From positions 3,906,001-3,970,000 of the forward strand of contig NC_047062.1 of assembly GCF_902459465.1 (NCBI RefSeq): 64,000 nt of DNA. The letters run 5' to 3'. The translations under genes and the position numbers were made by a program. Below are positions 10,531 through 35,854 of the stretch, in pieces. The notes beneath the pieces are model-generated. The model did not search any database. It had not been told where the DNA came from and saw only the letters and a list, made by a program, of their open reading frames with translations. Numbering within the stretch: position 1 is the first letter of the stretch; every line of letters begins with the position of its first letter. This stretch comes from Asterias rubens (Eukaryota).

Positions 10531-11607
10531 GCAGCTCAATGAAATTGGACCCTGGAACTTAGCTTCTAATTTTAACTTCAAAGAAAACATAAAACTTCAA
10601 AAGGTGGCTTTTGAGAAACTAAATGTTATCAGTTTTAAGATGACTTTTTATCGAACCGGCTTTTAAATAAAATTTTCTGCCAAATAACATTCAATCGGGC
10701 TTACAGAAAATGGGTTTATGGCATCTTAATATTTAACATATTCTTTATCAGTTAATATTGCAATTTTTCTTGCTAAATCTGCTTCAACATGATAACATAA
10801 CACTACTCAAATATATCACATTTTCATCTGTATAATTTCAAGAAATTGTGTAAAGTTTCTTAGATTAGTTTTTACATTGAGGTTATAGGCCTAACTGAAA
10901 TCCTTATTACCACTGATGAATTAATGGAAATTTTTTTTCTTGTAAAGTGTAGCCTCTTTAAAATTGCTAAACTACGCCCTACCAATCCTTGACTAATATG
11001 AGGATACATGTGAGATATATCATTTTGGAGAGCAATTCATTTGATGCAATAGGACAGCTGCTATAATGCAGAGTAATGTAATGGCAACTCATCTTCCTCT
11101 ATGTCCAGACTAGTGAAAATAATTGCCCTCCTGCAATAACCGCGATTGAGTTTGGAACTAATCGCCTGCGACATGCCTCCCCCATATATTTCAATACAAC
11201 CCCCCCCCCCCTCCCGCTTTGATTGCTCCAATGCCGATGAGCTGGGGCTCCATGTTATCATTTGACTGGATTTCAATGGATGCCTTTACTACCGATAATA
11301 ACCAATGTTTGTCTCAAATATATTGCCCTAATTTTTCTTCTCAATAAAGCGTATTTGTCACATCACAGCGCATTAACTATGGTGCGCATCTGTGTACTTC
11401 GGGTTAGACCCTAACACAGACTGACAAACGCATAGGAGGAGACAACCAAGCGTACCAAAACTAACATTTCATTGCCGATTATAAAGCAAGAGATTTTCCC
11501 ACCATGGAGAATTGTAGAAAAAGAACTACCAGACAAACAAGCAAACAAACAAATCATATAATATTTCTGTTCAATGAAAAGGTTTAATAATTGTTTAGAT
11601 TGTATTG

Positions 11608-11892
11608 TTAACTTTTTGGTTTTACCCATACACCCACATGTGTTAGCACTGTATTATCAGTACTTTCCCTGAGTTCTGTGAAAAAATATCACAGGCATGT
11701 TACTTGGTAGGGACTCAAACCCACGACCAGTGCAATTCTAGAGCAGTGTCTTACCAACCAGACCACCGAGATTGCCCGGTAGCTAGAGGCAGTTCAAATC
11801 CTATGTTTTGGCAGCGGGTACGACAACGAAATAATAGATGTTAAATTTGCATCGGGGATAAGAATATTCCTTTTGGTTTTACCATACACCGA
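11608..11892 (-). mobile_element. Terminally redundant retroposon with an internal tRNA-like sequence (family T2)
   Basis: 12-bp TSD tagattgtattg (11596-11607, 11893-11904); ~22-bp terminal direct repeat cttt(t)tggtttta(c)ccatacacc; minus-strand D arm GTCT-GGTTGGTA-AGAC and B box GGTTTGAGTCCC at ~11700-11771. Confidence 0.8.
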
Positions 11893-14495
11893 TAGATTGT
11901 ATTGGATTCTGTATGGGATTCGGTGATTTGTGTCATATGTTATGCATAAAAGTAGTCCAACATTAATTTACATCATTCTACCAAAATAATCATCCTGTAC
12001 TAAAAAAAAATATATATGTTTATGCTTAACCTACATGTCTGCTTCGTAGACCCATTTTTGTAAACATTAACTTGAGAAAATATTCAGCAATTCATCATAT
12101 TTTGTTTTCCCTTCATATCACTATATTATCACACCACTACACCACACACACACACGCACACTCACCAACAGATTAACATATTATATACAGATATAATAAA
12201 ATATAATACAAAACATTTTAGATGTAGCACACACTGCAGCACACTGGCCCGACACATCATCATAATATATCCCACGGTACATTTTTGATGAGTTTGACAT
12301 TTCAAGCACATGACCAACGACCCACTTTGCCTCAATAATTCATTATGTCAATTGCTCACAAATTGTTCTCATCCATGGTGGTGGCATAGTTGCTGCATGG
12401 GCGTACTGTTTGGTCGTTTACAAACCAGAGTTTAACTGATAATGAAGGGGGAGAGTCTAACAGCACCAATGTCGCTACCTTCTTTACAAAAATACACTTC
12501 GCCATTATCAATTTACAAATAGGTACGCACCTTGATGTATGTACAAAGTGTGCAAATGACAGGACAGTAACATGACACCCACATAAACTAATTTGCAAAT
12601 TACCTAAAAAGCAGCGGATAATAAATTATGTGGCATAGCCATTTTATTGTGCTGCTGTCACTGCAGCATTTACAATCCACCATGAACCAAACTGTGCATT
12701 AATTGGATCTAAGACACAATGCAGTTAAATTTGCAGAATATGTCAAAACCCAGACACAATGGTATAATATATTATGTCGATTCCTAAAATCGTTAAACTT
12801 CTATTGAAATTCTGAAATTCTAATTTAAAAACAAGTTCAATGACCACATTTTTATTAGAATATTTTTTTTTTTTGTATAATATTTTCTCTGACAGATGAT
12901 GCTGTTTCAAAATATATTTACATGTTTGCAAATATGCAATGCGGTCAATGCACAAAGTATATTATGTAAAACATGCAAAATTGTTGGTACATGGCTGATG
13001 GACTAGAGGCAATGTCGGGATTCATAGCCAGGTTTTTTTTTTCCAACTCCAAATCTTAATTTCTGGGACAAAGCTGCCCCCAAAATCTGACCTAGAGTCT
13101 ATGAAGTACCTAAAGTGGTTTCATTTTCAACTGGAAGTAGATCCCAAAGTTTAACGGTTTCTTGAGAATTGCAGCTGGTTTTTTTTTTGCTCCTTAATCA
13201 TCAGTTATACAACTGAACTATAATTATCATACAAATTTTAAAGTTGCATTTCAACAAAGAGCAAAATTGAACTAAAGGTACTGAACATGTTTTGGGTGAA
13301 TTTCACAATACATTTCGGGGGATTAAAACTATCTTTATACTATCGAAAGCTGATGTACATCTAAAGCAAGTAAGTTTTTATTGCCATTAATTTTAAGATT
13401 GATTACAAAATGTATACCTTCCCTTTAACAGATTCTGGAGTAATTGATTGGAAAGTCACTGCACCTTTGTCTCTCAAACCATCGCCATGGTTTATGAGCA
13501 GTAATCAGAGGAAGCATTTCTTCCGACCTACTAAATTTACTGATACATTCTTGAAGACATTCTGATCTTGATTTATATTTTTGTCTGATGATTTAAAGTT
13601 GCCTTAACAGTAAATTCCGTTTGACTGTACTTCTGATCCATTATGCTAACTCAAAAGAAATTGAGGACTTGAATTTTTTGTATTATAGCCACTGTACACT
13701 TTCCCTTTTCGTTAGAAGTATTTTTATTCTCAGGAGACATAAACAAGTTAAAATACATAATTATTCATCCCTTGAACATGCTACTATGAAATTATGCCGA
13801 AAATTATCCAGTAAAGGCCTGTACACATACCGATGCAAAATTGTGAGTTTTCTTGCTTCACAATTGAAAAACAGCGCGTAAAGATGTATAAATTCGCTCT
13901 GCATTCGCTTTCTTACATTGATTTTTGTGACGGTACTGGTATAATTTATGTCGGCAGATTTAAATAAAATTTCAATAAATGTGTCTTTCTATAGCTTCTT
14001 ATATTATTATTAGTTCATTTTTTAAAACATTCAAACTTGGCAGCCAGTAGCTGAATTGCGGTTACAATTACAGAGCATAAGAAAATATATATATACTATT
14101 TTAAAATTACAGAAAAACATTTAGAGATAAAAATATTTATTTAAGTACAAATATAAAATACAAGATGTTCAAACACTAAAATACAAAAATACTTTCCACT
14201 AGGGAGGCATAACACACCTCTTGCTAAAAACTCTAAACAATTAGGAAAACATGCAAGACACAACATGGACTACTAATTGGTTTGAAGAAAAGAGAGACAT
14301 ACTTTAAGACCTACATTGATGTAAATACAAACACAGTTAAATTGCTCTGAATTCACCTGTTAATTAATCCAATTAAAAACTGTCTGTGTAATTCATTAAC
14401 AGTCATACTGGAGACTTCTTGTGACTATATTTGTTTGATCTTTATTTATAAACTTAAGGTATTCAGCCTATAGTCCAGACTGGTTAGAAAGTATA

Positions 14496-26770: not shown

Positions 26771-28675
26771 GGGTTTCCAACTGGACAAGAAGGGGCTTCA
26801 CACAGAATCGTCAGGTTATCCCACTACCCGATACCCAATCTTGGTGAGACGGGCTTCACATAGAATCCTCAGGTTATCCCACTACCCGATACCCAACTGG
26901 GCGAGAGAGAGAGGGGCTTCACATAGAATCGTCAGGTTATTCCACTATACCGATACCCAACTGGGCGAGAGAGAGAGGGGCTTCACATAGAATCGTCAGG
27001 TTATTCTACTATACCGATACCCAACTGGGCGAGAGAGAGGGGCTTCACATAGAATCGTCAGGTTATCCCACTACCCGATACCCAACTGGGCGAGAGAGAG
27101 AGGGGCTTCACATAGAATCGTCAGGTTATTCCACTATACCGATACCCAACTGGGCGAGAGAGAGGGGCTTCACATAGAATCGTCAGGTTATCCCACTACC
27201 CGATACCCAACTGGGCGAGAGAGAGGGGCTTCACACAGAATCGTCAGGTTATTCCACTATACCGATACCCAATCTTGGTGAGACGGGCTTCACATAGAAT
27301 CTTCAGGTTATCCCACTACCCGATACCCAATCTTGGTTAGAAGGGCTTCACATAGAATCGTCAGGTTATCCCACTACCCGATACCCAATCTTGGTTAGAC
27401 GGGCTTCACATAGAATCCTCAGGTTATCCGACTACCCGATACCCAACTGGGCGAGAGAGAGAGGGGCTTTCACATAGAATCGTCAGGTTATTCTACTATA
27501 ACGATACCCAACTGGGCGAGAGAGAGAGAGGGGCTTCACATAGAATCGTCAGGTTATTCTACTATACCGATACCCAACTGGGCGAGAGAGAGAGGGGCTT
27601 CACATAGAATCGTCAGATTATCCCACTACCCGATACCCAACTGGGCGAGAGAGAGGGGCTTCACACAGAATCGTCAGGTTATTCCACTTTACCGATACCC
27701 AATCTTGGTGAGACGGGCTTCACATAGAATCTTCAGGTTGTCCCACTACCCGATACCCAATCTTGGTTAGAAGGGCTCATATAGAATCGTCAGGTTATCC
27801 CACTACCCGATACCCAACTGGGCGAGAGAGAGAGGGGCTTTCACATAGAATCGTCAGGCTATCCCACTACCCGATACCCAATCTTGGTGAGACGGGCTTC
27901 ACATAGAATCGTCAGGTTATCCCACTACCTGATACCCAACTGGGCGAGAGAGAGGGGCTTCACATAGAATCGTAAGGTTATTCCACTATACCGATACCCA
28001 ACTGGACGAGAGAGAGAGAGGGGCTTCACATAGAATAGTCAGGTTATCCCACTACCCGATACCCAACTGGGCGAGAGAGAGGGGCTTCACACAGAATCGT
28101 CAGGTTATTCCACTATACCGATACCCAATCTTGGTGAGACGTGCTTCACATAGAATCGTCAGGTTATCCCACTACCCGATACCCAATCTTGGTTAGACAG
28201 GCTTCACACAGAATCCTCAGGTTATCCGACTACCCGATACCCAACTGGGCGAGAGAGAGAGGGGCTTCACATAGAATCGTCAGGTTATTCCACTATACCG
28301 ATACCCAACTGGGCGAGAGAAAGAGGGGCTTCGCATAGAATCGTCAGGTTATTCTACTATACCGATACCCAACTGGGCGAGAGAGAGGGGCTTCACATAG
28401 AATCGTCAGGTTATTCCACTATACCGATACCCAATCTTGGTGAGACGGACTTCACATAGAATCGTCAGGTTATCCCACTACCCGATACCCAACTGGGCGA
28501 GAGAGAGGGGCTTCACATAGAATCGTCAGGTTATCCCACTACCCGATACCCAACTGGGCGAGAGAGAGGGGCTTCACACAGAATCGTCAGGTTATTCCAC
28601 TATACCAATACCCAATCTTGGTGAGACGTGCTTCACATAGAATTGTCAGGTTATCCCATTTGCCGGACACCCAAT
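26771..28675. repeat. Minisatellite, ~53-62 bp unit, roughly 30-35 copies, with interspersed variants
   Basis: Core gggcttcacatagaatcgtcaggttatcccactacccgatacccaa followed by either ctgggc(ga)n or tcttggtgagac/tcttggttaga. Confidence 0.95.
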
Positions 28676-29210: not shown

Positions 29211-30312
29211 CTGGTCATTGGGCCGATAACATTCCTGTAATCTGCCTCAGCTCCCTGGGGAGCATAGAGCCACAGGCGCTGCTAAGGCTTTTTCAAAATT
29301 GTTTTCAATTGATGCCGAACAATATTCAAAGCGTAATTTTTTTGGCACTAAACCATGATTAAGTTTGTAAACTATTTTCCATTTAGGATTAATCACTGTT
29401 CCTACAATAGCCTACAATGTCGGTAATATAACTAGGGTAAAACAAAAGCACGAAAAAAGAAAAAAGAAACACTATATCTTTAATCTAAGGCTATAGGCTG
29501 GTTGTATAACACTTTGGAAGCACAGAATCCAGCTGCACTGTCATGTTTACCCATTTCTACTGAGGTGACTCCGTTCTTGGATGCAAGACATAACGGCAGC
29601 TGAATCCATCACCTAACATCATTAACCACTCTCTGGACTTTCAAGAAAATGCGCAATTATGCCCAGAAATATTTTTAGAATTGGACAAGTGGAAAATAGA
29701 AAGAAAAAAACGCAGTTCTGGATGTTTTTGACTGACGTCTTTTGAAATGTATGAAATACTTTTTTTATACTTTGGGGCGGTAGAGCTTTGATCACCTGCC
29801 TTGGCAGTAGAGTGAAGATAACGGGAATGACGTCACGTTGAAGATGGTTGTTTAATACTGTCACTAAATCTTATGTATCTTTATCCTTAAAGCGAGGAAT
29901 GTTAACAAAACAAATCCAAACTCAAAGAGGGATGATGTCTGTATGGTAATATAGCGCAAGGTATTCCCCTCTACCACTGGTATCAAAATAGCTTATCCAA
30001 GTGGAGGGACAGTAAAATGTATAGTGACATTCCTTCTTGATATAATTTCCTCTTTGAAGAAATTTTTTTGTCAAAATTGTATTTATTTCCAATCAATAAG
30101 CCTAAAAGGTGTAGTTGGTACTGATACTATGAAATCTGGGAACTATTGTGGCCAGAAATGCTGTCAGCTTTAAGACAGTAATAATTGGGTGCAATTCTAC
30201 TAGGCCGAATAAAAAAAAAAAACATGTTTAGCGTCCCTGCCCACTTCCTTTTTAGAGGCCGCCTCCTTTTTTATTTTATTTTTTATTTTTATGCACATAT
30301 ATATATATATAT

Positions 30313-30981
30313 AATGAATAGGGTAGATGGCCTTAGCTTTCGATCCAATCCGGACCTTCTTCAGAGGCATAAAACAAGTACAAACAAATACATATCCATT
30401 TATAGAAAAAAAGAGGGGGAAAGGGATTAAGGAAAGGATCCAGAAAGAAGCGGGAAAATAACAGCCAATCAAAGTTCCTATTTCAGAAACAATATTGGTG
30501 GCTATGAACCAATAGGAGTGAAGTGGCGAGGACAAAGGATGTTTAGAATGAAAGGAAGGGTTACTGGACCATAAAAGTGGTAAATGTATTGTTCGACAAC
30601 AATGCAGGGAGACATGAAAGGGTAGGATTAGAGAGCAAGTTGCATCATGATGCAACTAACAATGGTCAATTAATAAGAATAGCAAGATCAAAGGTATGAT
30701 GATTTTAAAAATAAGTATGAGGGACCTGTGGAGAAAAAGGGGGGGTTACTTATATCAGATAGTTACAGTGATGAATTTATAAAAACAACTTTAAACTAGG
30801 TTAATTTATACTTTATGTACAAAATATATACAACATATAAGTTCTTAGGCAGAAGTGAAGTGGAGGGTAATGAGAAGTTATTTAACACCAGTGTTTATGT
30901 TAAGTCCAAAGGGTTTGACTGTCTTGAGTTGGTGAATCCAGTGTGATTCTCTATTCTTGCGGTGTGTGTCATCACCATTGC
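30313..30981 (-). mobile_element. Penelope-like element 3' fragment (pLTR-sized), copy 1
   Basis: Contains a GIY-YIG C-terminal peptide, 3' UTR and hammerhead; flanked by (AT)8 at 30297-30312 and 30983-30998; ~98% identical (by eye) to 39430-40100. Confidence 0.88.
30327..30370 (-). ncRNA. Minimal type I hammerhead ribozyme (dimer-type), copy 1
   Basis: Minus strand AUGCCU-CUGAAGA-A-GGUCC-GGAUU-GGAUC-GAA-AGCU-A|AGG(C)CAU: stem I, core, stem II and palindromic stem III AGCU. Predicted cleavage between 30334 and 30333. Confidence 0.85.
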
Positions 30982-30982
30982 A
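30878..30982 (-). pseudogene. C-terminal fragment of a Penelope-like GIY-YIG endonuclease
   Basis: CNGDDTHRKNRESHWIHQLKTVKPFGLNINTGVK*, matching the R..RE..WI..L.T..P.GLN motif of PLE endonucleases. Confidence 0.85.
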
Positions 30983-31005
30983 ATATATATATATATATTA
31001 AAAAA

Positions 31006-34000
31006 TGGCTTCTGACAGGCACCCCCGAACAAAGATATTGACAAAATTGGGAGACCACCAACATAGGGCTAGATAGCTCAGTTGGTAGAGCGCCGGCACG
31101 TTAAACCGGAGGTCGTTGGTTCAAATCCCGCTCTAGTCAATTTTCTTTGTTCAATCCAAAATCATTTAAAAAAAATGTTCCCAGTCAGTTTCCCTTGTGG
31201 TTTATTATTTGATATCTGATATAAAAAAGTCGCATCCCCTTAAGGTGATCCCCTGTCTGCCGCTTCCCAGGTTGTATCGTTACCCGGGTGTGATCCCTGG
31301 CTACACGGCAGTTTGCGGTTTAATGGCTTCTGACAGGCACCCCCGAACAAAGATATTGACAAAATTGGGAGACCACCAACATAGGGCTAGATAGCTCAGT
31401 TGGTAGAGCGCCGGCACGTTAAACCGGAGGTCGTTGGTTCAAATCCCGCTCTAGTCAATTTTCTTTGTTCAATCCAAAATCATTTAAAAAAAATGTTCCC
31501 AGTCAGTTTCCCTTGTGGTTTATTATTTGATATCTGATATAAAAAAGTCGCATCCCCTTAAGGTGATCCCCTGTCTGCCGCTTCCCAGGTTGTATCGTTA
31601 CCCGGGTGTGATCCCTGGCTACACGGCAGTTTGCGGTTTAATGGCTTCTGACAGGCACCCCCGAACAAAGATATTGACAAAATTGGGAGACCACCAACAT
31701 AGGGCTAGATAGCTCAGTTGGTAGAGCGCCGGCACGTTAAACCGGAGGTCGTTGGTTCAAATCCCGCTCTAGTCAATTTTCTTTGTTCAATCCAAAATCA
31801 TTTAAAAAAAATGTTCCCAGTCAGTTTCCCTTGTGGTTTATTATTTGATATCTGATATAAAAAAGTCGCATCCCCTTAAGGTGATCCCCTGTCTGCCGCT
31901 TCCCAGGTTGTATCGTTACCCGGGTGTGATCCCTGGCTACACGGCAGTTTGCGGTTTAATGGCTTCTGACAGGCACCCCCGAACAAAGATATTGACAAAA
32001 TTGGGAGACCACCAACATAGGGCTAGATAGCTCAGTTGGTAGAGCGCCGGCACGTTAAACCGGAGGTCGTTGGTTCAAATCCCGCTCTAGTCAATTTTCT
32101 TTGTTCAATCCAAAATCATTTAAAAAAAATGTTCCCAGTCAGTTTCCCTTGTGGTTTATTATTTGATATCTGATATAAAAAAGTCGCATCCCCTTAAGGT
32201 GATCCCCTGTCTGCCGCTTCCCAGGTTGTATCGTTACCCGGGTGTGATCCCTGGCTACACGGCAGTTTGCGGTTTAATGGCTTCTGACAGGCACCCCCGA
32301 ACAAAGATATTGACAAAATTGGGAGACCACCAACATAGGGCTAGATAGCTCAGTTGGTAGAGCGCCGGCACGTTAAACCGGAGGTCGTTGGTTCAAATCC
32401 CGCTCTAGTCAATTTTCTTTGTTCAATCCAAAATCATTTAAAAAAAATGTTCCCAGTCAGTTTCCCTTGTGGTTTATTATTTGATATCTGATATAAAAAA
32501 GTCGCATCCCCTTAAGGTGATCCCCTGTCTGCCGCTTCCCAGGTTGTATCGTTACCCGGGTGTGATCCCTGGCTACACGGCAGTTTGCGGTTTAATGGCT
32601 TCTGACAGGCACCCCCGAACAAAGATATTGACAAAATTGGGAGACCACCAACATAGGGCTAGATAGCTCAGTTGGTAGAGCGCCGGCACGTTAAACCGGA
32701 GGTCGTTGGTTCAAATCCCGCTCTAGTCAATTTTCTTTGTTCAATCCAAAATCATTTAAAAAAAATGTTCCCAGTCAGTTTCCCTTGTGGTTTATTATTT
32801 GATATCTGATATAAAAAAGTCGCATCCCCTTAAGGTGATCCCCTGTCTGCCGCTTCCCAGGTTGTATCGTTACCCGGGTGTGATCCCTGGCTACACGGCA
32901 GTTTGCGGTTTAATGGCTTCTGACAGGCACCCCCGAACAAAGATATTGACAAAATTGGGAGACCACCAACATAGGGCTAGATAGCTCAGTTGGTAGAGCG
33001 CCGGCACGTTAAACCGGAGGTCGTTGGTTCAAATCCCGCTCTAGTCAATTTTCTTTGTTCAATCCAAAATCATTTAAAAAAAATGTTCCCAGTCAGTTTC
33101 CCTTGTGGTTTATTATTTGATATCTGATATAAAAAAGTCGCATCCCCTTAAGGTGATCCCCTGTCTGCCGCTTCCCAGGTTGTATCGTTACCCGGGTGTG
33201 ATCCCTGGCTACACGGCAGTTTGCGGTTTAATGGCTTCTGACAGGCACCCCCGAACAAAGATATTGACAAAATTGGGAGACCACCAACATAGGGCTAGAT
33301 AGCTCAGTTGGTAGAGCGCCGGCACGTTAAACCGGAGGTCGTTGGTTCAAATCCCGCTCTAGTCAATTTTCTTTGTTCAATCCAAAATCATTTAAAAAAA
33401 ATGTTCCCAGTCAGTTTCCCTTGTGGTTTATTATTTGATATCTGATATAAAAAAGTCGCATCCCCTTAAGGTGATCCCCTGTCTGCCGCTTCCCAGGTTG
33501 TATCGTTACCCGGGTGTGATCCCTGGCTACACGGCAGTTTGCGGTTTAATGGCTTCTGACAGGCACCCCCGAACAAAGATATTGACAAAATTGGGAGACC
33601 ACCAACATAGGGCTAGATAGCTCAGTTGGTAGAGCGCCGGCACGTTAAACCGGAGGTCGTTGGTTCAAATCCCGCTCTAGTCAATTTTCTTTGTTCAATC
33701 CAAAATCATTTAAAAAAAATGTTCCCAGTCAGTTTCCCTTGTGGTTTATTATTTGATATCTGATATAAAAAAGTCGCATCCCCTTAAGGTGATCCCCTGT
33801 CTGCCGCTTCCCAGGTTGTATCGTTACCCGGGTGTGATCCCTGGCTACACGGCAGTTTGCGGTTTAATGGCTTCTGACAGGCACCCCCGAACAAAGATAT
33901 TGACAAAATTGGGAGACCACCAACATAGGGCTAGATAGCTCAGTTGGTAGAGCGCCGGCACGTTAAACCGGAGGTCGTTGGTTCAAATCCCGCTCTAGTC

Positions 34001-34713
34001 AATTTTCTTTGTTCAATCCAAAATCATTTAAAAAAAATGTTCCCAGTCAGTTTCCCTTGTGGTTTATTATTTGATATCTGATATAAAAAAGTCGCATCCC
34101 CTTAAGGTGATCCCCTGTCTGCCGCTTCCCAGGTTGTATCGTTACCCGGGTGTGATCCCTGGCTACACGGCAGTTTGCGGTTTAATGGCTTCTGACAGGC
34201 ACCCCCGAACAAAGATATTGACAAAATTGGGAGACCACCAACATAGGGCTAGATAGCTCAGTTGGTAGAGCGCCGGCACGTTAAACCGGAGGTCGTTGGT
34301 TCAAATCCCGCTCTAGTCAATTTTCTTTGTTCAATCCAAAATCATTTAAAAAAAATGTTCCCAGTCAGTTTCCCTTGTGGTTTATTATTTGATATCTGAT
34401 ATAAAAAAGTCGCATCCCCTTAAGGTGATCCCCTGTCTGCCGCTTCCCAGGTTGTATCGTTACCCGGGTGTGATCCCTGGCTACACGGCAGTTTGCGGTT
34501 TAATGGCTTCTGACAGGCACCCCCGAACAAAGATATTGACAAAATTGGGAGACCACCAACATAGGGCTAGATAGCTCAGTTGGTAGAGCGCCGGCACGTT
34601 AAACCGGAGGTCGTTGGTTCAAATCCCGCTCTAGTCAATTTTCTTTGTTCAATCCAAAATCATTTAAAAAAAATGTTCCCAGTCAGTTTCCCTTGTGGTT
34701 TATTATTTGATAT
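31006..34713 (+). repeat. Tandem array of a 318-bp tRNA-containing unit (11 full copies + 210 bp; family T1)
   Basis: Unit starts tggcttctgacagg at 31006+318k (k=0-11); no differences seen between copies; flanked by tatatatatattaaaaaa at 30988-31005 and 34714-34731. Confidence 0.97.
31067..31139 (+). ncRNA. tRNA-like cloverleaf, 73 nt, nominal GTT anticodon, probably non-decoding; 12 copies at +318-bp intervals (last 34565-34637)
   Basis: Acceptor GGCTAGA/TCTAGTC, D arm GCTC/GAGC, A box TAGCTCAGTTGG, B box GGTTCAAATCC, TTTT 2 nt downstream. Atypical A32/C33, C31-A39 and T51-C63 mismatches. Confidence 0.8.
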
Positions 34714-35854
34714 TATATATATATTAAAAAAAATATAAAAAAATTATTATTTTAATTTTATGAAAAAGGGTTATTTTAAATGATCTCAGCTAAAACAATC
34801 TGCATGTCTTGTCTGAATGTCTTTACCAAAATGTTTTATTTATGTATTGTGTGTTTGAGCAGTAGAAAAAAAAATGGATATTTGACATCTTAAAAAGAAT
34901 AAAAAGCCCCTCCTCCTTCCTTTTTTGAGAAACCCGGACACTAAACATGTTTCTTTTTTTACTCGGCCCTACTCTTGCAAAGGTGGCACAACAAATGAAG
35001 CATGAAATTGGGCAACTATGAATTGTTTTCCGCCTGATAAATTTTCCTTACTAACAAAGAGTTAAAAGCTGACGCAAGATCACAACTAAAGATACCATTA
35101 TCCCATCATGCAAACCTATGACCGCAATAACTTCAGCTATTCATTCCTCCCTTCACATATTTATGTCCCTCTGATAACTGTTATTCTACATAGTAGCTGC
35201 TAGCATTTTCTCATCGTTTGGCTCATGAACTTTGGACCGCCATCATGTACTTTATCCTTGCCACTATCCTGGAACAGTCACATCTGACTGTTAGGTGTAT
35301 TGACAGAACTAGTACACTCTCACTGAATAAACACACTTGCAATGGACAAACCCTGTGTCAAATCCTCAGCATGTCACACGTAAGAGGCCACCTATAGCAA
35401 GGCATTAAATCTACCTCCCTTAGTTCCCCTTACAGCAATTTTTGGAATACCTTTTGCTCTGATAATTTACCTTTTTTCAGTGGGGGGGTGTCCAATAGAT
35501 CGGTAATGACGTCATGAGCACTGCATTTGTTTTTGTATATGAACTCTAAATAAACTTGAGGTCCGTGTGTTTTGTTTTCTTAAGGAACACATGCAGGATC
35601 AAACTGTGAATGCATTAACATTTGTGGCTTAATTTATATACCTAGAGGCCTTCATAAAATGATGCAAGAAGGATGCCTTTCTGGATTTTGATGGGGAGTG
35701 GCAAGGGGGAGGGGGGCAAAACCTAATATGGCTCTGCTCCAACCCCAACCCAAACTTGTGAACACTGCATCATTACGTTGGTTTTCCTCCTTACAAAATA
35801 CACACCATCTAAACAAGGCTAGAAGCACCTTCGGGGATACATTTTCGTTCACAC

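What the first reader, a model, noticed from the sequence alone, without database searches (positions are those of the whole stretch)
30988..34731. An apparently identical 11.66-mer of a 318-bp unit is bracketed by an 18-bp direct repeat, as if inserted in one event
Seen: tatatatatattaaaaaa occurs immediately before (30988-31005) and after (34714-34731) the array. The array starts and ends at different phases of the unit, and I found no substitution among the 12 copies. Inference: a single target-primed insertion of a rolling-circle cDNA explains TSD, permutation and homogeneity together. The alternative is insertion of a ~1.66-mer followed by very recent unequal crossover. The flanking repeat is low complexity, so chance similarity is possible.
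Basis: partly seen in the sequence, partly recalled or inferred. Interest (0 to 1): 0.75.

Follow-up and report, generated by a model that had tools for sequence, protein, structure and literature searches.

The report
Young tandem retroposon array with tRNA-like units
This perfect 12-copy repeat is a very recent insertion of a short mobile element that carries a tRNA-like gene and lands in TA microsatellites, usually as one or two units and sometimes as many, most likely copied in by an active Penelope-like retrotransposon of this starfish-like genome; it resembles the known animal "retrozymes" but has no ribozyme.

Summary
Window 31004-34713 is 11 full copies plus 212 bp of a 318-bp unit with no mismatch. 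It is flanked by an exact 18-bp duplication, whose non-microsatellite part (TTAAAAAA) makes it a real target-site duplication.

The array belongs to a dispersed family with about 228 exact 3' termini genome-wide. Members share one 3' end (unit position about 212) followed by (TA)n. Their 5' ends are variable. They carry variable-length duplications, head-to-head inverted copies and short 5' self-duplications. These are the insertion scars described for Penelope-like elements (PLEs).

An active PLE (reverse transcriptase plus C-terminal GIY-YIG nuclease, many intact 921-aa frames) has the same (TA)n tails. A fragment of it lies directly upstream of the array.

Each array is built from one sequence variant. 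Private mutations are never shared by a subset of units. No longer identical parent array was found. Copy number therefore seems to be set at insertion.

A circular template is plausible but not shown.

Each unit holds a tRNA-like gene with intact A and B boxes but a defective anticodon arm, and no hammerhead. I class it as a ribozyme-free variant of PLE-dependent tandem retroposons. This scan had already noted the same kind elsewhere in this genome (s1-180019). No read data could be obtained.

The parts
31004..34713 (+). Array of the 318-bp retroposon unit: 11 full units plus the first 212 bp of a twelfth. All are identical. The 3' end lies at the family's canonical end.
30988..31005 (.). Left copy of the 18-bp target-site duplication, (TA)5 followed by TTAAAAAA. 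Its last two A also match the unit (2-nt microhomology at the 5' junction).
34714..34731 (.). Right copy of the 18-bp target-site duplication. Its (TA)5 part is where the cDNA would have been primed.
31067..31139 (+). tRNA-like module of unit 1. It repeats every 318 bp up to 34565-34637, 12 in all. ARAGORN calls it Asn-GTT and Rfam tRNA scores 54.3 bits. It has C at position 33, a C-A mismatch closing the anticodon stem and a U-C mismatch in the T stem.
31074..31085 (+). A-box-like sequence of unit 1 (TAGCTCAGTTGG). The B-box-like GGTTCAAATCC lies at 31118-31128.
   Evidence: read from the sequence, against the textbook Pol III type 2 promoter consensus
31141..31144 (+). TTTT run two bases after the tRNA-like module, the only T4 in the unit. 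It is a possible Pol III terminator.
31212..31223 (+). AU-rich patch of the unit (ATATCTGATATA, unit 209-220). Family members end at 212, followed by (TA)n. I infer this is the site where the nicked (TA)n target primes reverse transcription.
30296..30985 (-). Context: the 3'-terminal ~685 bp of the autonomous Penelope-like element (last ~34 codons plus 3' UTR), with its own (TA)n tail at 30298-30313. The array sits in the TA tract at its 5' side.

Best explanation
The array is one very recent insertion of a non-autonomous retroposon whose 318-bp unit contains a tRNA-like gene.

Inferred mechanism:
- An endonuclease nicks a (TA)n microsatellite.
- The exposed TA end pairs with the AU patch of the element RNA at unit positions 209-212.
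- Reverse transcription runs 5'-wards through 11.66 unit lengths of a template that continues past the priming site. That template is either a concatemeric or circular RNA, or the same RNA re-used repeatedly.
- The cDNA is joined upstream with 2 nt of microhomology.
- A second nick 18 bp away gives the duplication.

The enzyme is most likely the reverse transcriptase / GIY-YIG nuclease of the active Penelope-like element of this genome.

Shown: the family structure, the scars, the purity of arrays, and the presence of an active PLE with the same TA tails. Inferred: the priming step, the identity of the enzyme, and the form of the template.
For: - Family and copy number: the same unit lies at 40 or more loci in arrays of 1.1-11.7 copies.
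- 3' ends: they fall at unit 212-224 in 37 of 46 arrays, with (TA)n in 36 of 46.
- 5' ends: they are spread over the whole unit.
- Template continues past the priming site: two members run on to unit 214 and 218, and six end at a second AU-rich patch at 158-171.
- Informative duplications: 14, 17, 18 and 38 bp.
- PLE-type scars: head-to-head inverted copies (L032, L038, L060, L064, L067) and 13-19-nt direct repeats of the element's own 5' end (L037, L043, L049). These match the description in PMC8557442.
- Candidate enzyme: the PLE has RVT_1 plus a C-terminal GIY-YIG domain and a CxxC...CxxC linker. There are 118 nuclease hits, many of them open frames of 921 aa, and tandem spacings of about 4.4 kb. 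The PLE has (TA)n tails. At least 8 of these 118 nuclease hits lie within about 2 kb of one of the family's arrays (coordinates).
- Array purity: 2 of 85 adjacent unit pairs are discordant at diagnostic sites, against about 60 expected if units were mixed.
- No stepwise growth: 32 private substitutions are singletons, none is shared by a subset of units, and 7 are fixed array-wide.
- Youth: three arrays on C1, C10 and C6 have identical units.
- No parent: no longer identical array appears among the best genome-wide matches.
Against: - No reads were available, so neither the copy number nor an empty allele was checked.
- The unit shares no sequence with the available 3' part of the PLE. The PLE 5' part could not be fetched.
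- LINEs with TA tails were not searched for.
- Most family insertions are short. On C1-C7 about 73 have no internal junction, 57 have one and only 11 have two or more. The window array is therefore an outlier, and a simple constant-rate rolling circle does not fit.
- One array (L033) has the same 1-bp deletion in units 2 and 4, so some exchange after insertion does occur.
Confidence: 0.68

Rival explanations
1. A short copy (about 1.66 units, the commonest multi-unit form of the family) was inserted and then grew to 11.66 units by repeated unequal crossing-over or replication slippage.
For: Genome-wide, most insertions have zero or one internal junction. The window array is the longest seen. 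L033 carries one indel shared by two non-adjacent units. Identical copies cannot by themselves tell one event from very recent growth.
Against: In arrays with three or more units, all 32 private substitutions are singletons and none is shared by a subset of units. Unit duplication is therefore rare compared with point mutation. Yet this locus would need at least four expansions with no substitution in 3.7 kb. The two other arrays with identical units (7.05 and 3.19 copies) would need several more.
Confidence: 0.17
2. The element is mobilised by a LINE specific for TA repeats, not by a Penelope-like element. The array is a SINE multimer made by template jumping of a LINE reverse transcriptase.
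For: A fixed 3' end, 5' truncation and variable duplications are also LINE features. The unit has no sequence similarity to the PLE 3' end.
Against: Partial tandems, head-to-head 5' copies and short terminal self-duplications are the combination described for PLEs. The only TA-tailed autonomous element found is a PLE with many intact frames, often next to the arrays. No LINE candidate was looked for.
Confidence: 0.1
3. The copy number or the perfect identity is an assembly or polishing artefact.
For: Perfect tandem repeats of 3.7 kb can be mis-sized. No reads could be laid on the locus.
Against: Other arrays of the family keep array-specific variants and private singletons, so polishing did not flatten the differences between units. 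Arrays of 7 and 8 units exist elsewhere with unique flanks.
Confidence: 0.04
4. It is a working cluster of tRNA-Asn genes or an ordinary satellite.
For: ARAGORN and Rfam tRNAs, each followed by TTTT.
Against: Position 33 is C. There are two stem mismatches. The anticodon differs between subfamilies (98T>C gives GCT). The unit is dispersed at hundreds of sites with duplications and 5' truncation.
Confidence: 0.01

Closest known systems
Animal non-LTR retrozymes (Cervera and de la Pena 2020, PMC7229834; Li, Clavereau and Pollet 2026, bioRxiv 10.64898/2026.07.22.740005)
   Same: Units of 150-450 bp. Dispersed head-to-tail multimers from dimers to large arrays. GC below 50% (45.6% here). Duplications longer than 4 bp. 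No LTR, PBS or PPT. They occur together with PLEs and are proposed to depend on them. A rolling-circle origin is suspected.
   Different: The defining type I hammerhead is absent: there is no CUGANGA box on either strand, and Rfam finds nothing but tRNA. The unit RNA is not highly self-paired (z = -1.1). No similarity to the available part of the PLE was found. Each unit instead carries a tRNA-like gene.
Sm-alpha / Sj-alpha SINE-like elements of schistosomes (as summarised in PMC2770079 and PMC6765202)
   Same: A unit about 330 bp long that occurs both dispersed and in tandem. It has a tRNA-related Pol III promoter inside the unit. At least two tandem units are needed for a transcript that contains a whole unit.
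   Different: The schistosome elements have an active hammerhead that cuts multimeric transcripts to unit length. The starfish element has none, and it has a T4 run right after the tRNA-like part.
Penelope-like elements, canonical C-terminal EN+ type (PMC8557442)
   Same: Partial tandems, inverted 5'-truncated copies, short terminal extensions, variable duplications and a bias for microsatellites. PMC8557442 reports a (TA)n bias for Naiads and discusses the CxxC linker as a possible cause in Neptune-type nucleases.
   Different: The unit is non-coding and unrelated in sequence to the PLE 3' end. It reaches 11.7 unit lengths, whereas PLEs are usually described as 1-2 copies.
tRNA-derived SINEs mobilised by LINEs
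   Same: A tRNA-like module with A and B boxes. A non-autonomous, 5'-truncated, TSD-flanked retroposon.
   Different: The tRNA-like part is internal (unit 64-136) and not at a fixed 5' end. There is no LINE-derived or poly(A) tail. The element inserts as multimers and inverted pairs.

Membership tests
Non-LTR retrozyme | Type I hammerhead ribozyme in every tandem unit | tested here: not met
   No CUGANGA core on either strand of the circularised unit. Rfam at E<=10 over more than 2 units on both strands gives only tRNA. Caveat: Rfam also missed the hammerhead-like motif reported in the neighbouring PLE fragment.
Non-LTR retrozyme | Short (150-450 bp) low-GC units in dispersed head-to-tail multimers, with duplications longer than 4 bp | tested here: met
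   318 bp, GC 45.6%, 1.1-11.7 copies at 40 or more loci, duplications of 14-38 bp
Non-LTR retrozyme | Expressed as abundant circular RNA of unit length | not testable with these tools
PLE-dependent non-autonomous element | Partial tandems together with inverted 5'-truncated copies and short terminal extensions | tested here: met
   compared with the description in PMC8557442
PLE-dependent non-autonomous element | An active PLE with the same target and tail in the same genome | tested here: met
   RVT_1 plus C-terminal GIY-YIG. 118 nuclease hits with many 921-aa open frames. The 3' end is followed by (TA)n and lies next to arrays.
PLE-dependent non-autonomous element | Sequence derived from the PLE terminal repeat (pLTR), as proposed for retrozymes | tested here: inconclusive
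   No similarity to the last ~1.7 kb of the PLE. The 5' part of the PLE could not be fetched.
tRNA-derived SINE (LINE partner) | tRNA-related head at a fixed 5' end, and a 3' tail shared with a LINE or poly(A) | tested here: not met
   The module is internal at unit 64-136. 5' ends are spread over the unit. The tail is (TA)n.
Functional tRNA gene | Canonical cloverleaf with U33 and a stable anticodon identity | tested here: not met
   C33, a C-A and a U-C mismatch. The anticodon is GTT or GCT depending on subfamily.
Satellite grown by unequal crossing-over | Variants shared by subsets of neighbouring units (higher-order structure or divergence gradient) | tested here: not met
   32 singleton substitutions, 0 subset-shared. 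There is one shared indel, in L033.

The most novel reading that the evidence does not exclude
The tRNA-like module replaces the hammerhead of retrozymes. Host tRNA-processing enzymes (RNase P, RNase Z or the splicing and ligation machinery) would cut multimeric transcripts to unit length, and a host ligase would close them. A ribozyme-free 318-nt circular RNA would then be the rolling template for the Penelope-like reverse transcriptase. This would be a protein-processed counterpart of retrozymes and a natural system in which PLE tandem formation can be dissected.
Probability: 0.13. Interest if true: 0.8.

Novelty: new variant of a known kind. Interest (0 to 1): 0.5.

Why it matters
How Penelope-like elements and animal retrozymes produce tandem copies is unsolved. 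The literature proposes rolling circles, template jumps or local amplification.

This family is active now: three arrays at different loci have identical units. Its 3' end is explained by microhomology with the TA target. Its arrays are each built from one template variant and show no later growth. It therefore gives natural evidence that multimers are made during insertion.

It also shows that a hammerhead is not needed for this life style. A tRNA-like Pol III-type module can sit in its place.

For genome annotation, the 12 'tRNA-Asn genes' at this locus, and the family's tRNA-like modules at its other insertion sites, are retroposon parts and not tRNA genes.

Tried and rejected
- Ribozymes: Rfam at E<=10 on both strands and a hammerhead core scan found none in the unit. 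The control motif in the PLE fragment was also missed by both, so minimal variants are not fully excluded.
- Viroid-like rod: the unit RNA folds no better than shuffles (z = -1.1).
- Endless reading frame: 318 is a multiple of 3, but every frame has 4-8 stops.
- Shared tail with the PLE: only chance 12-mers.
- Preferred 5' end at unit 53-58, where a Pol III start would lie: five arrays start there, but the scan statistic is not significant (P about 0.24).
- Empty site or haplotig in the assembly: the downstream flank has one full match only, and its first 230 bp are another repeat family.
- Gapped pattern to list all long arrays: not accepted for this genome. It was replaced by a whole-array DNA query.
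- Systematic TSD test: most duplications cannot be told from (TA)n. Non-TA parts of 10 nt or more occur in 8.7% of true flank pairs against 1.5% of shuffled pairs.
Full report
**1. Observation**

TRF finds one array at 31004-34713 with period 318, 11.7 copies, 100% matches and no indels. A base-by-base check gives 11 full units without a single difference, plus a 212-bp partial unit. Periodicity stops exactly at 31004 and 34713.

The 18-mer TATATATATATTAAAAAA occurs only twice in the window, at 30988 and 34714, touching both ends of the array. Its first ten bases are TA repeat and carry no information, because family members normally end in (TA)n. The remaining TTAAAAAA occurs at 4.4e-4 per base in the window. 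The duplication is therefore real. The two final A also match the unit, which gives 2 nt of microhomology at the 5' junction.

**2. What the unit contains**

- Each unit has a 73-nt tRNA-like module at unit positions 64-136. ARAGORN calls it Asn-GTT and Rfam tRNA scores 54.3 bits.
- The acceptor, D and T arms and the A-box-like and B-box-like sequences are intact.
- Position 33 is C instead of the near-universal U. The pair that closes the anticodon stem is C-A. The T stem has a U-C mismatch.
- One subfamily has anticodon GCT instead of GTT (98T>C). It is not a decoding tRNA.
- A TTTT run starts two bases after the module and is the only T4 in the unit.
- No other Rfam family matches at E<=10 on either strand, and neither strand has a CUGANGA hammerhead core. 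Both methods also missed the hammerhead-like motif that another note reports in the neighbouring PLE fragment, so this control is weak.
- The unit RNA folds no better than shuffled sequence (z = -1.1).
- All six frames have stops.
- GC content is 45.6%.

**3. It is a mobile family**

The genome is a 417.6-Mb eukaryote in 150 contigs. Earlier notes of this scan call it a sea star; I did not test that.

The unit gave 170 scored matches at about 40 loci and more than 4400 first-look candidates. I fetched 39 loci and defined 46 arrays of at least one unit.

- 3' ends: at unit 212-224 in 37 of 46 arrays, followed by (TA)n in 36 of 46.
- Other 3' ends: six arrays end at a second AU-rich patch (unit 158-171). 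Two run on to 214 and 218 before joining the flank. The template RNA therefore continues beyond position 212, and 212 is a priming hot spot rather than an RNA end.
- 5' ends: spread over the whole unit. A cluster at 53-58, where a Pol III start would be expected, is not significant.
- Duplications: mostly hidden in TA repeat. Four are informative, at 14, 17, 18 (this window) and 38 bp.
- Complex structures: five loci have head-to-head inverted copies. Four have a 13-19-nt direct repeat of the element's own 5' end.

Craig et al. 2021 (PMC8557442) describe partial tandems, inverted 5'-truncated copies, short terminal extensions and a microsatellite bias as typical of Penelope-like elements. They report (TA)n as the favoured target of Naiads.

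**4. The likely helper**

- A GIY-YIG search of the genome gives 118 hits. Many have identical scores and open frames of 921 aa. Several pairs on one strand are spaced about 4.4 kb apart, which indicates tandem PLE copies.
- A 597-aa partial frame has RVT_1 followed by a C-terminal GIY-YIG domain. A CxxC...CxxC linker precedes the nuclease. PMC8557442 discusses this motif as a possible cause of microsatellite targeting.
- The PLE 3' UTR ends in (TA)n. At least eight of the 118 nuclease hits lie within about 2 kb of one of the family's arrays (coordinates).
- In the window, 30296-30985 on the minus strand is the last ~685 bp of this PLE. The array sits in the TA tract beside it.
- In the window, three of the four (TA)5-or-longer tracts flank such insertions.
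- The unit has no sequence similarity to the available part of the PLE. The 5' part of the PLE could not be fetched.

**5. One event or stepwise growth**

- Array purity: different arrays carry different diagnostic variants (169A>C, 98T>C, 192T>C and others), but within an array all units share them. Of 85 adjacent unit pairs, 2 are discordant, against about 60 expected if units were drawn from the pool. Free template jumping among a mixed RNA pool is therefore excluded. Each array stems from one template sequence.
- Chimeras: three arrays have a 3'-most copy of another variant (L036, L055, L032), so occasional template switches do occur.
- No stepwise signature: in arrays with three or more units, 32 private substitutions are all singletons, none is shared by a subset of units, and 7 are fixed array-wide. 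The only shared private change is a 1-bp deletion in units 2 and 4 of L033. Unit duplication after insertion is thus rare relative to point mutation.
- Cost of the stepwise model: it would need at least four expansions here, and several more in the two other arrays with identical units (C10 with 7.05 copies, C6 with 3.19), with almost no substitutions.
- No parent array: with the whole array as query, this is the longest array of the family among the 40 best candidates. The next are 2.6 kb and 2.2 kb. No identical parent of at least 11.66 units is seen. This argues against simple copying of a genomic array transcript.

**6. What does not fit a simple rolling circle**

Exact counts over the genome give 218 internal junctions (...GATATC) and 228 termini (...GATAT followed by A, T or G). 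On contigs C1-C7, about 73 termini have no internal junction and 57 insertions have one. Only 11 have two or more: three with 2, three with 3, three with 4, one with 5 and one with 11, which is this window.

The chance of continuing is about 0.48 for the first unit length, 0.16 for the second, and 0.4-0.7 after that. This is not a constant-rate process. Either there are two kinds of template or event, or long arrays collapse with time. I cannot tell which.

**7. Relatives**

A sister family (85-89% identity, arrays up to 3.3 kb) shares unit positions about 35-205. That region covers the leader, the tRNA-like module and the 3' part. The sister family does not share positions 213-318 and 1-34, and its T4 is broken. 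The tRNA-like module and the 3' region are thus the conserved core.

**8. Comparison with the literature**

- Animal non-LTR retrozymes are 150-450-bp low-GC tandem units with type I hammerheads. They are expressed as circular RNA and are now argued to be non-autonomous PLE derivatives (PMC7229834; bioRxiv 10.64898/2026.07.22.740005).
- Schistosome Sm-alpha elements combine a tRNA-related Pol III promoter with a hammerhead in a tandem unit of about 330 bp (PMC2770079; PMC6765202).
- The present family has the genomic behaviour of the first group and the promoter-like module of the second, but no ribozyme. I found no description of such an element, though my searches were limited to the held library.
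- A follow-up of this scan reached the same reading for a 312-bp family elsewhere in this genome (s1-180019). My analysis is independent of it and agrees.

**9. Limits**

- No sequencing reads could be used. The assembled copy number, an empty allele and any RNA are therefore untested.
- The identity of the enzyme rests on scars and neighbourhood, not on shared sequence.
- LINEs with TA tails were not searched for.

**Verdict**

A single multimeric retro-insertion is the best-supported reading (about 0.7). A circular template remains open. The element is a ribozyme-free, tRNA-like-bearing variant of PLE-type tandem retroposons.

Noticed in passing
window 30296-30985 (minus strand): A 5'-truncated copy (about 685 bp) of the active Penelope-like element: the last ~34 codons plus the 3' UTR, flanked by TA repeats on both sides. 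The same fragment start (...CATCACCATTGCAA) also abuts a 318-bp array in L039. It holds a CUGAAGA...GAAA hammerhead-like box near its 3' end. Neither Rfam nor my strict scan confirmed that box.
   Followed up: partly
window 34740-34971: The first ~230 bp downstream of the array belong to another interspersed repeat. At least 40 copies at 77-90% identity lie on many contigs.
   Followed up: partly
window 26777-28658: A 1.9-kb tandem array with a 58-bp period and higher-order periods of 426 and 487 bp, 86-88% matches.
   Followed up: no
window 11596-11904: A different short element with a tRNA-like core on the minus strand (A-box-like and B-box-like sequences). ARAGORN and Rfam do not call it at gathering score. 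Another note lists it as family T2.
   Followed up: no
L060:2340-2596, L062:537-646; G000:C13:11051774-11055114: A sister family at 85-89% identity. It shares the leader, the tRNA-like module and the 3' part but has a different remainder, lacks the T4 run and forms arrays up to 3.3 kb.
   Followed up: partly
L074 (G000:C23:5207473-5210721): A nest in one TA tract: a minus-strand 318-bp array, a 5'-truncated PLE with an open nuclease frame, a plus-strand 318-bp array, then an inverted PLE tail.
   Followed up: partly
G000:C2:24069341/24073791, C17:2437990/2442422, C23:8984995/8989408: Pairs of PLE nuclease domains on one strand, 4.41-4.45 kb apart, indicating tandem PLE copies. Many copies have 921-aa open frames, so the PLE looks currently active.
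   Followed up: no
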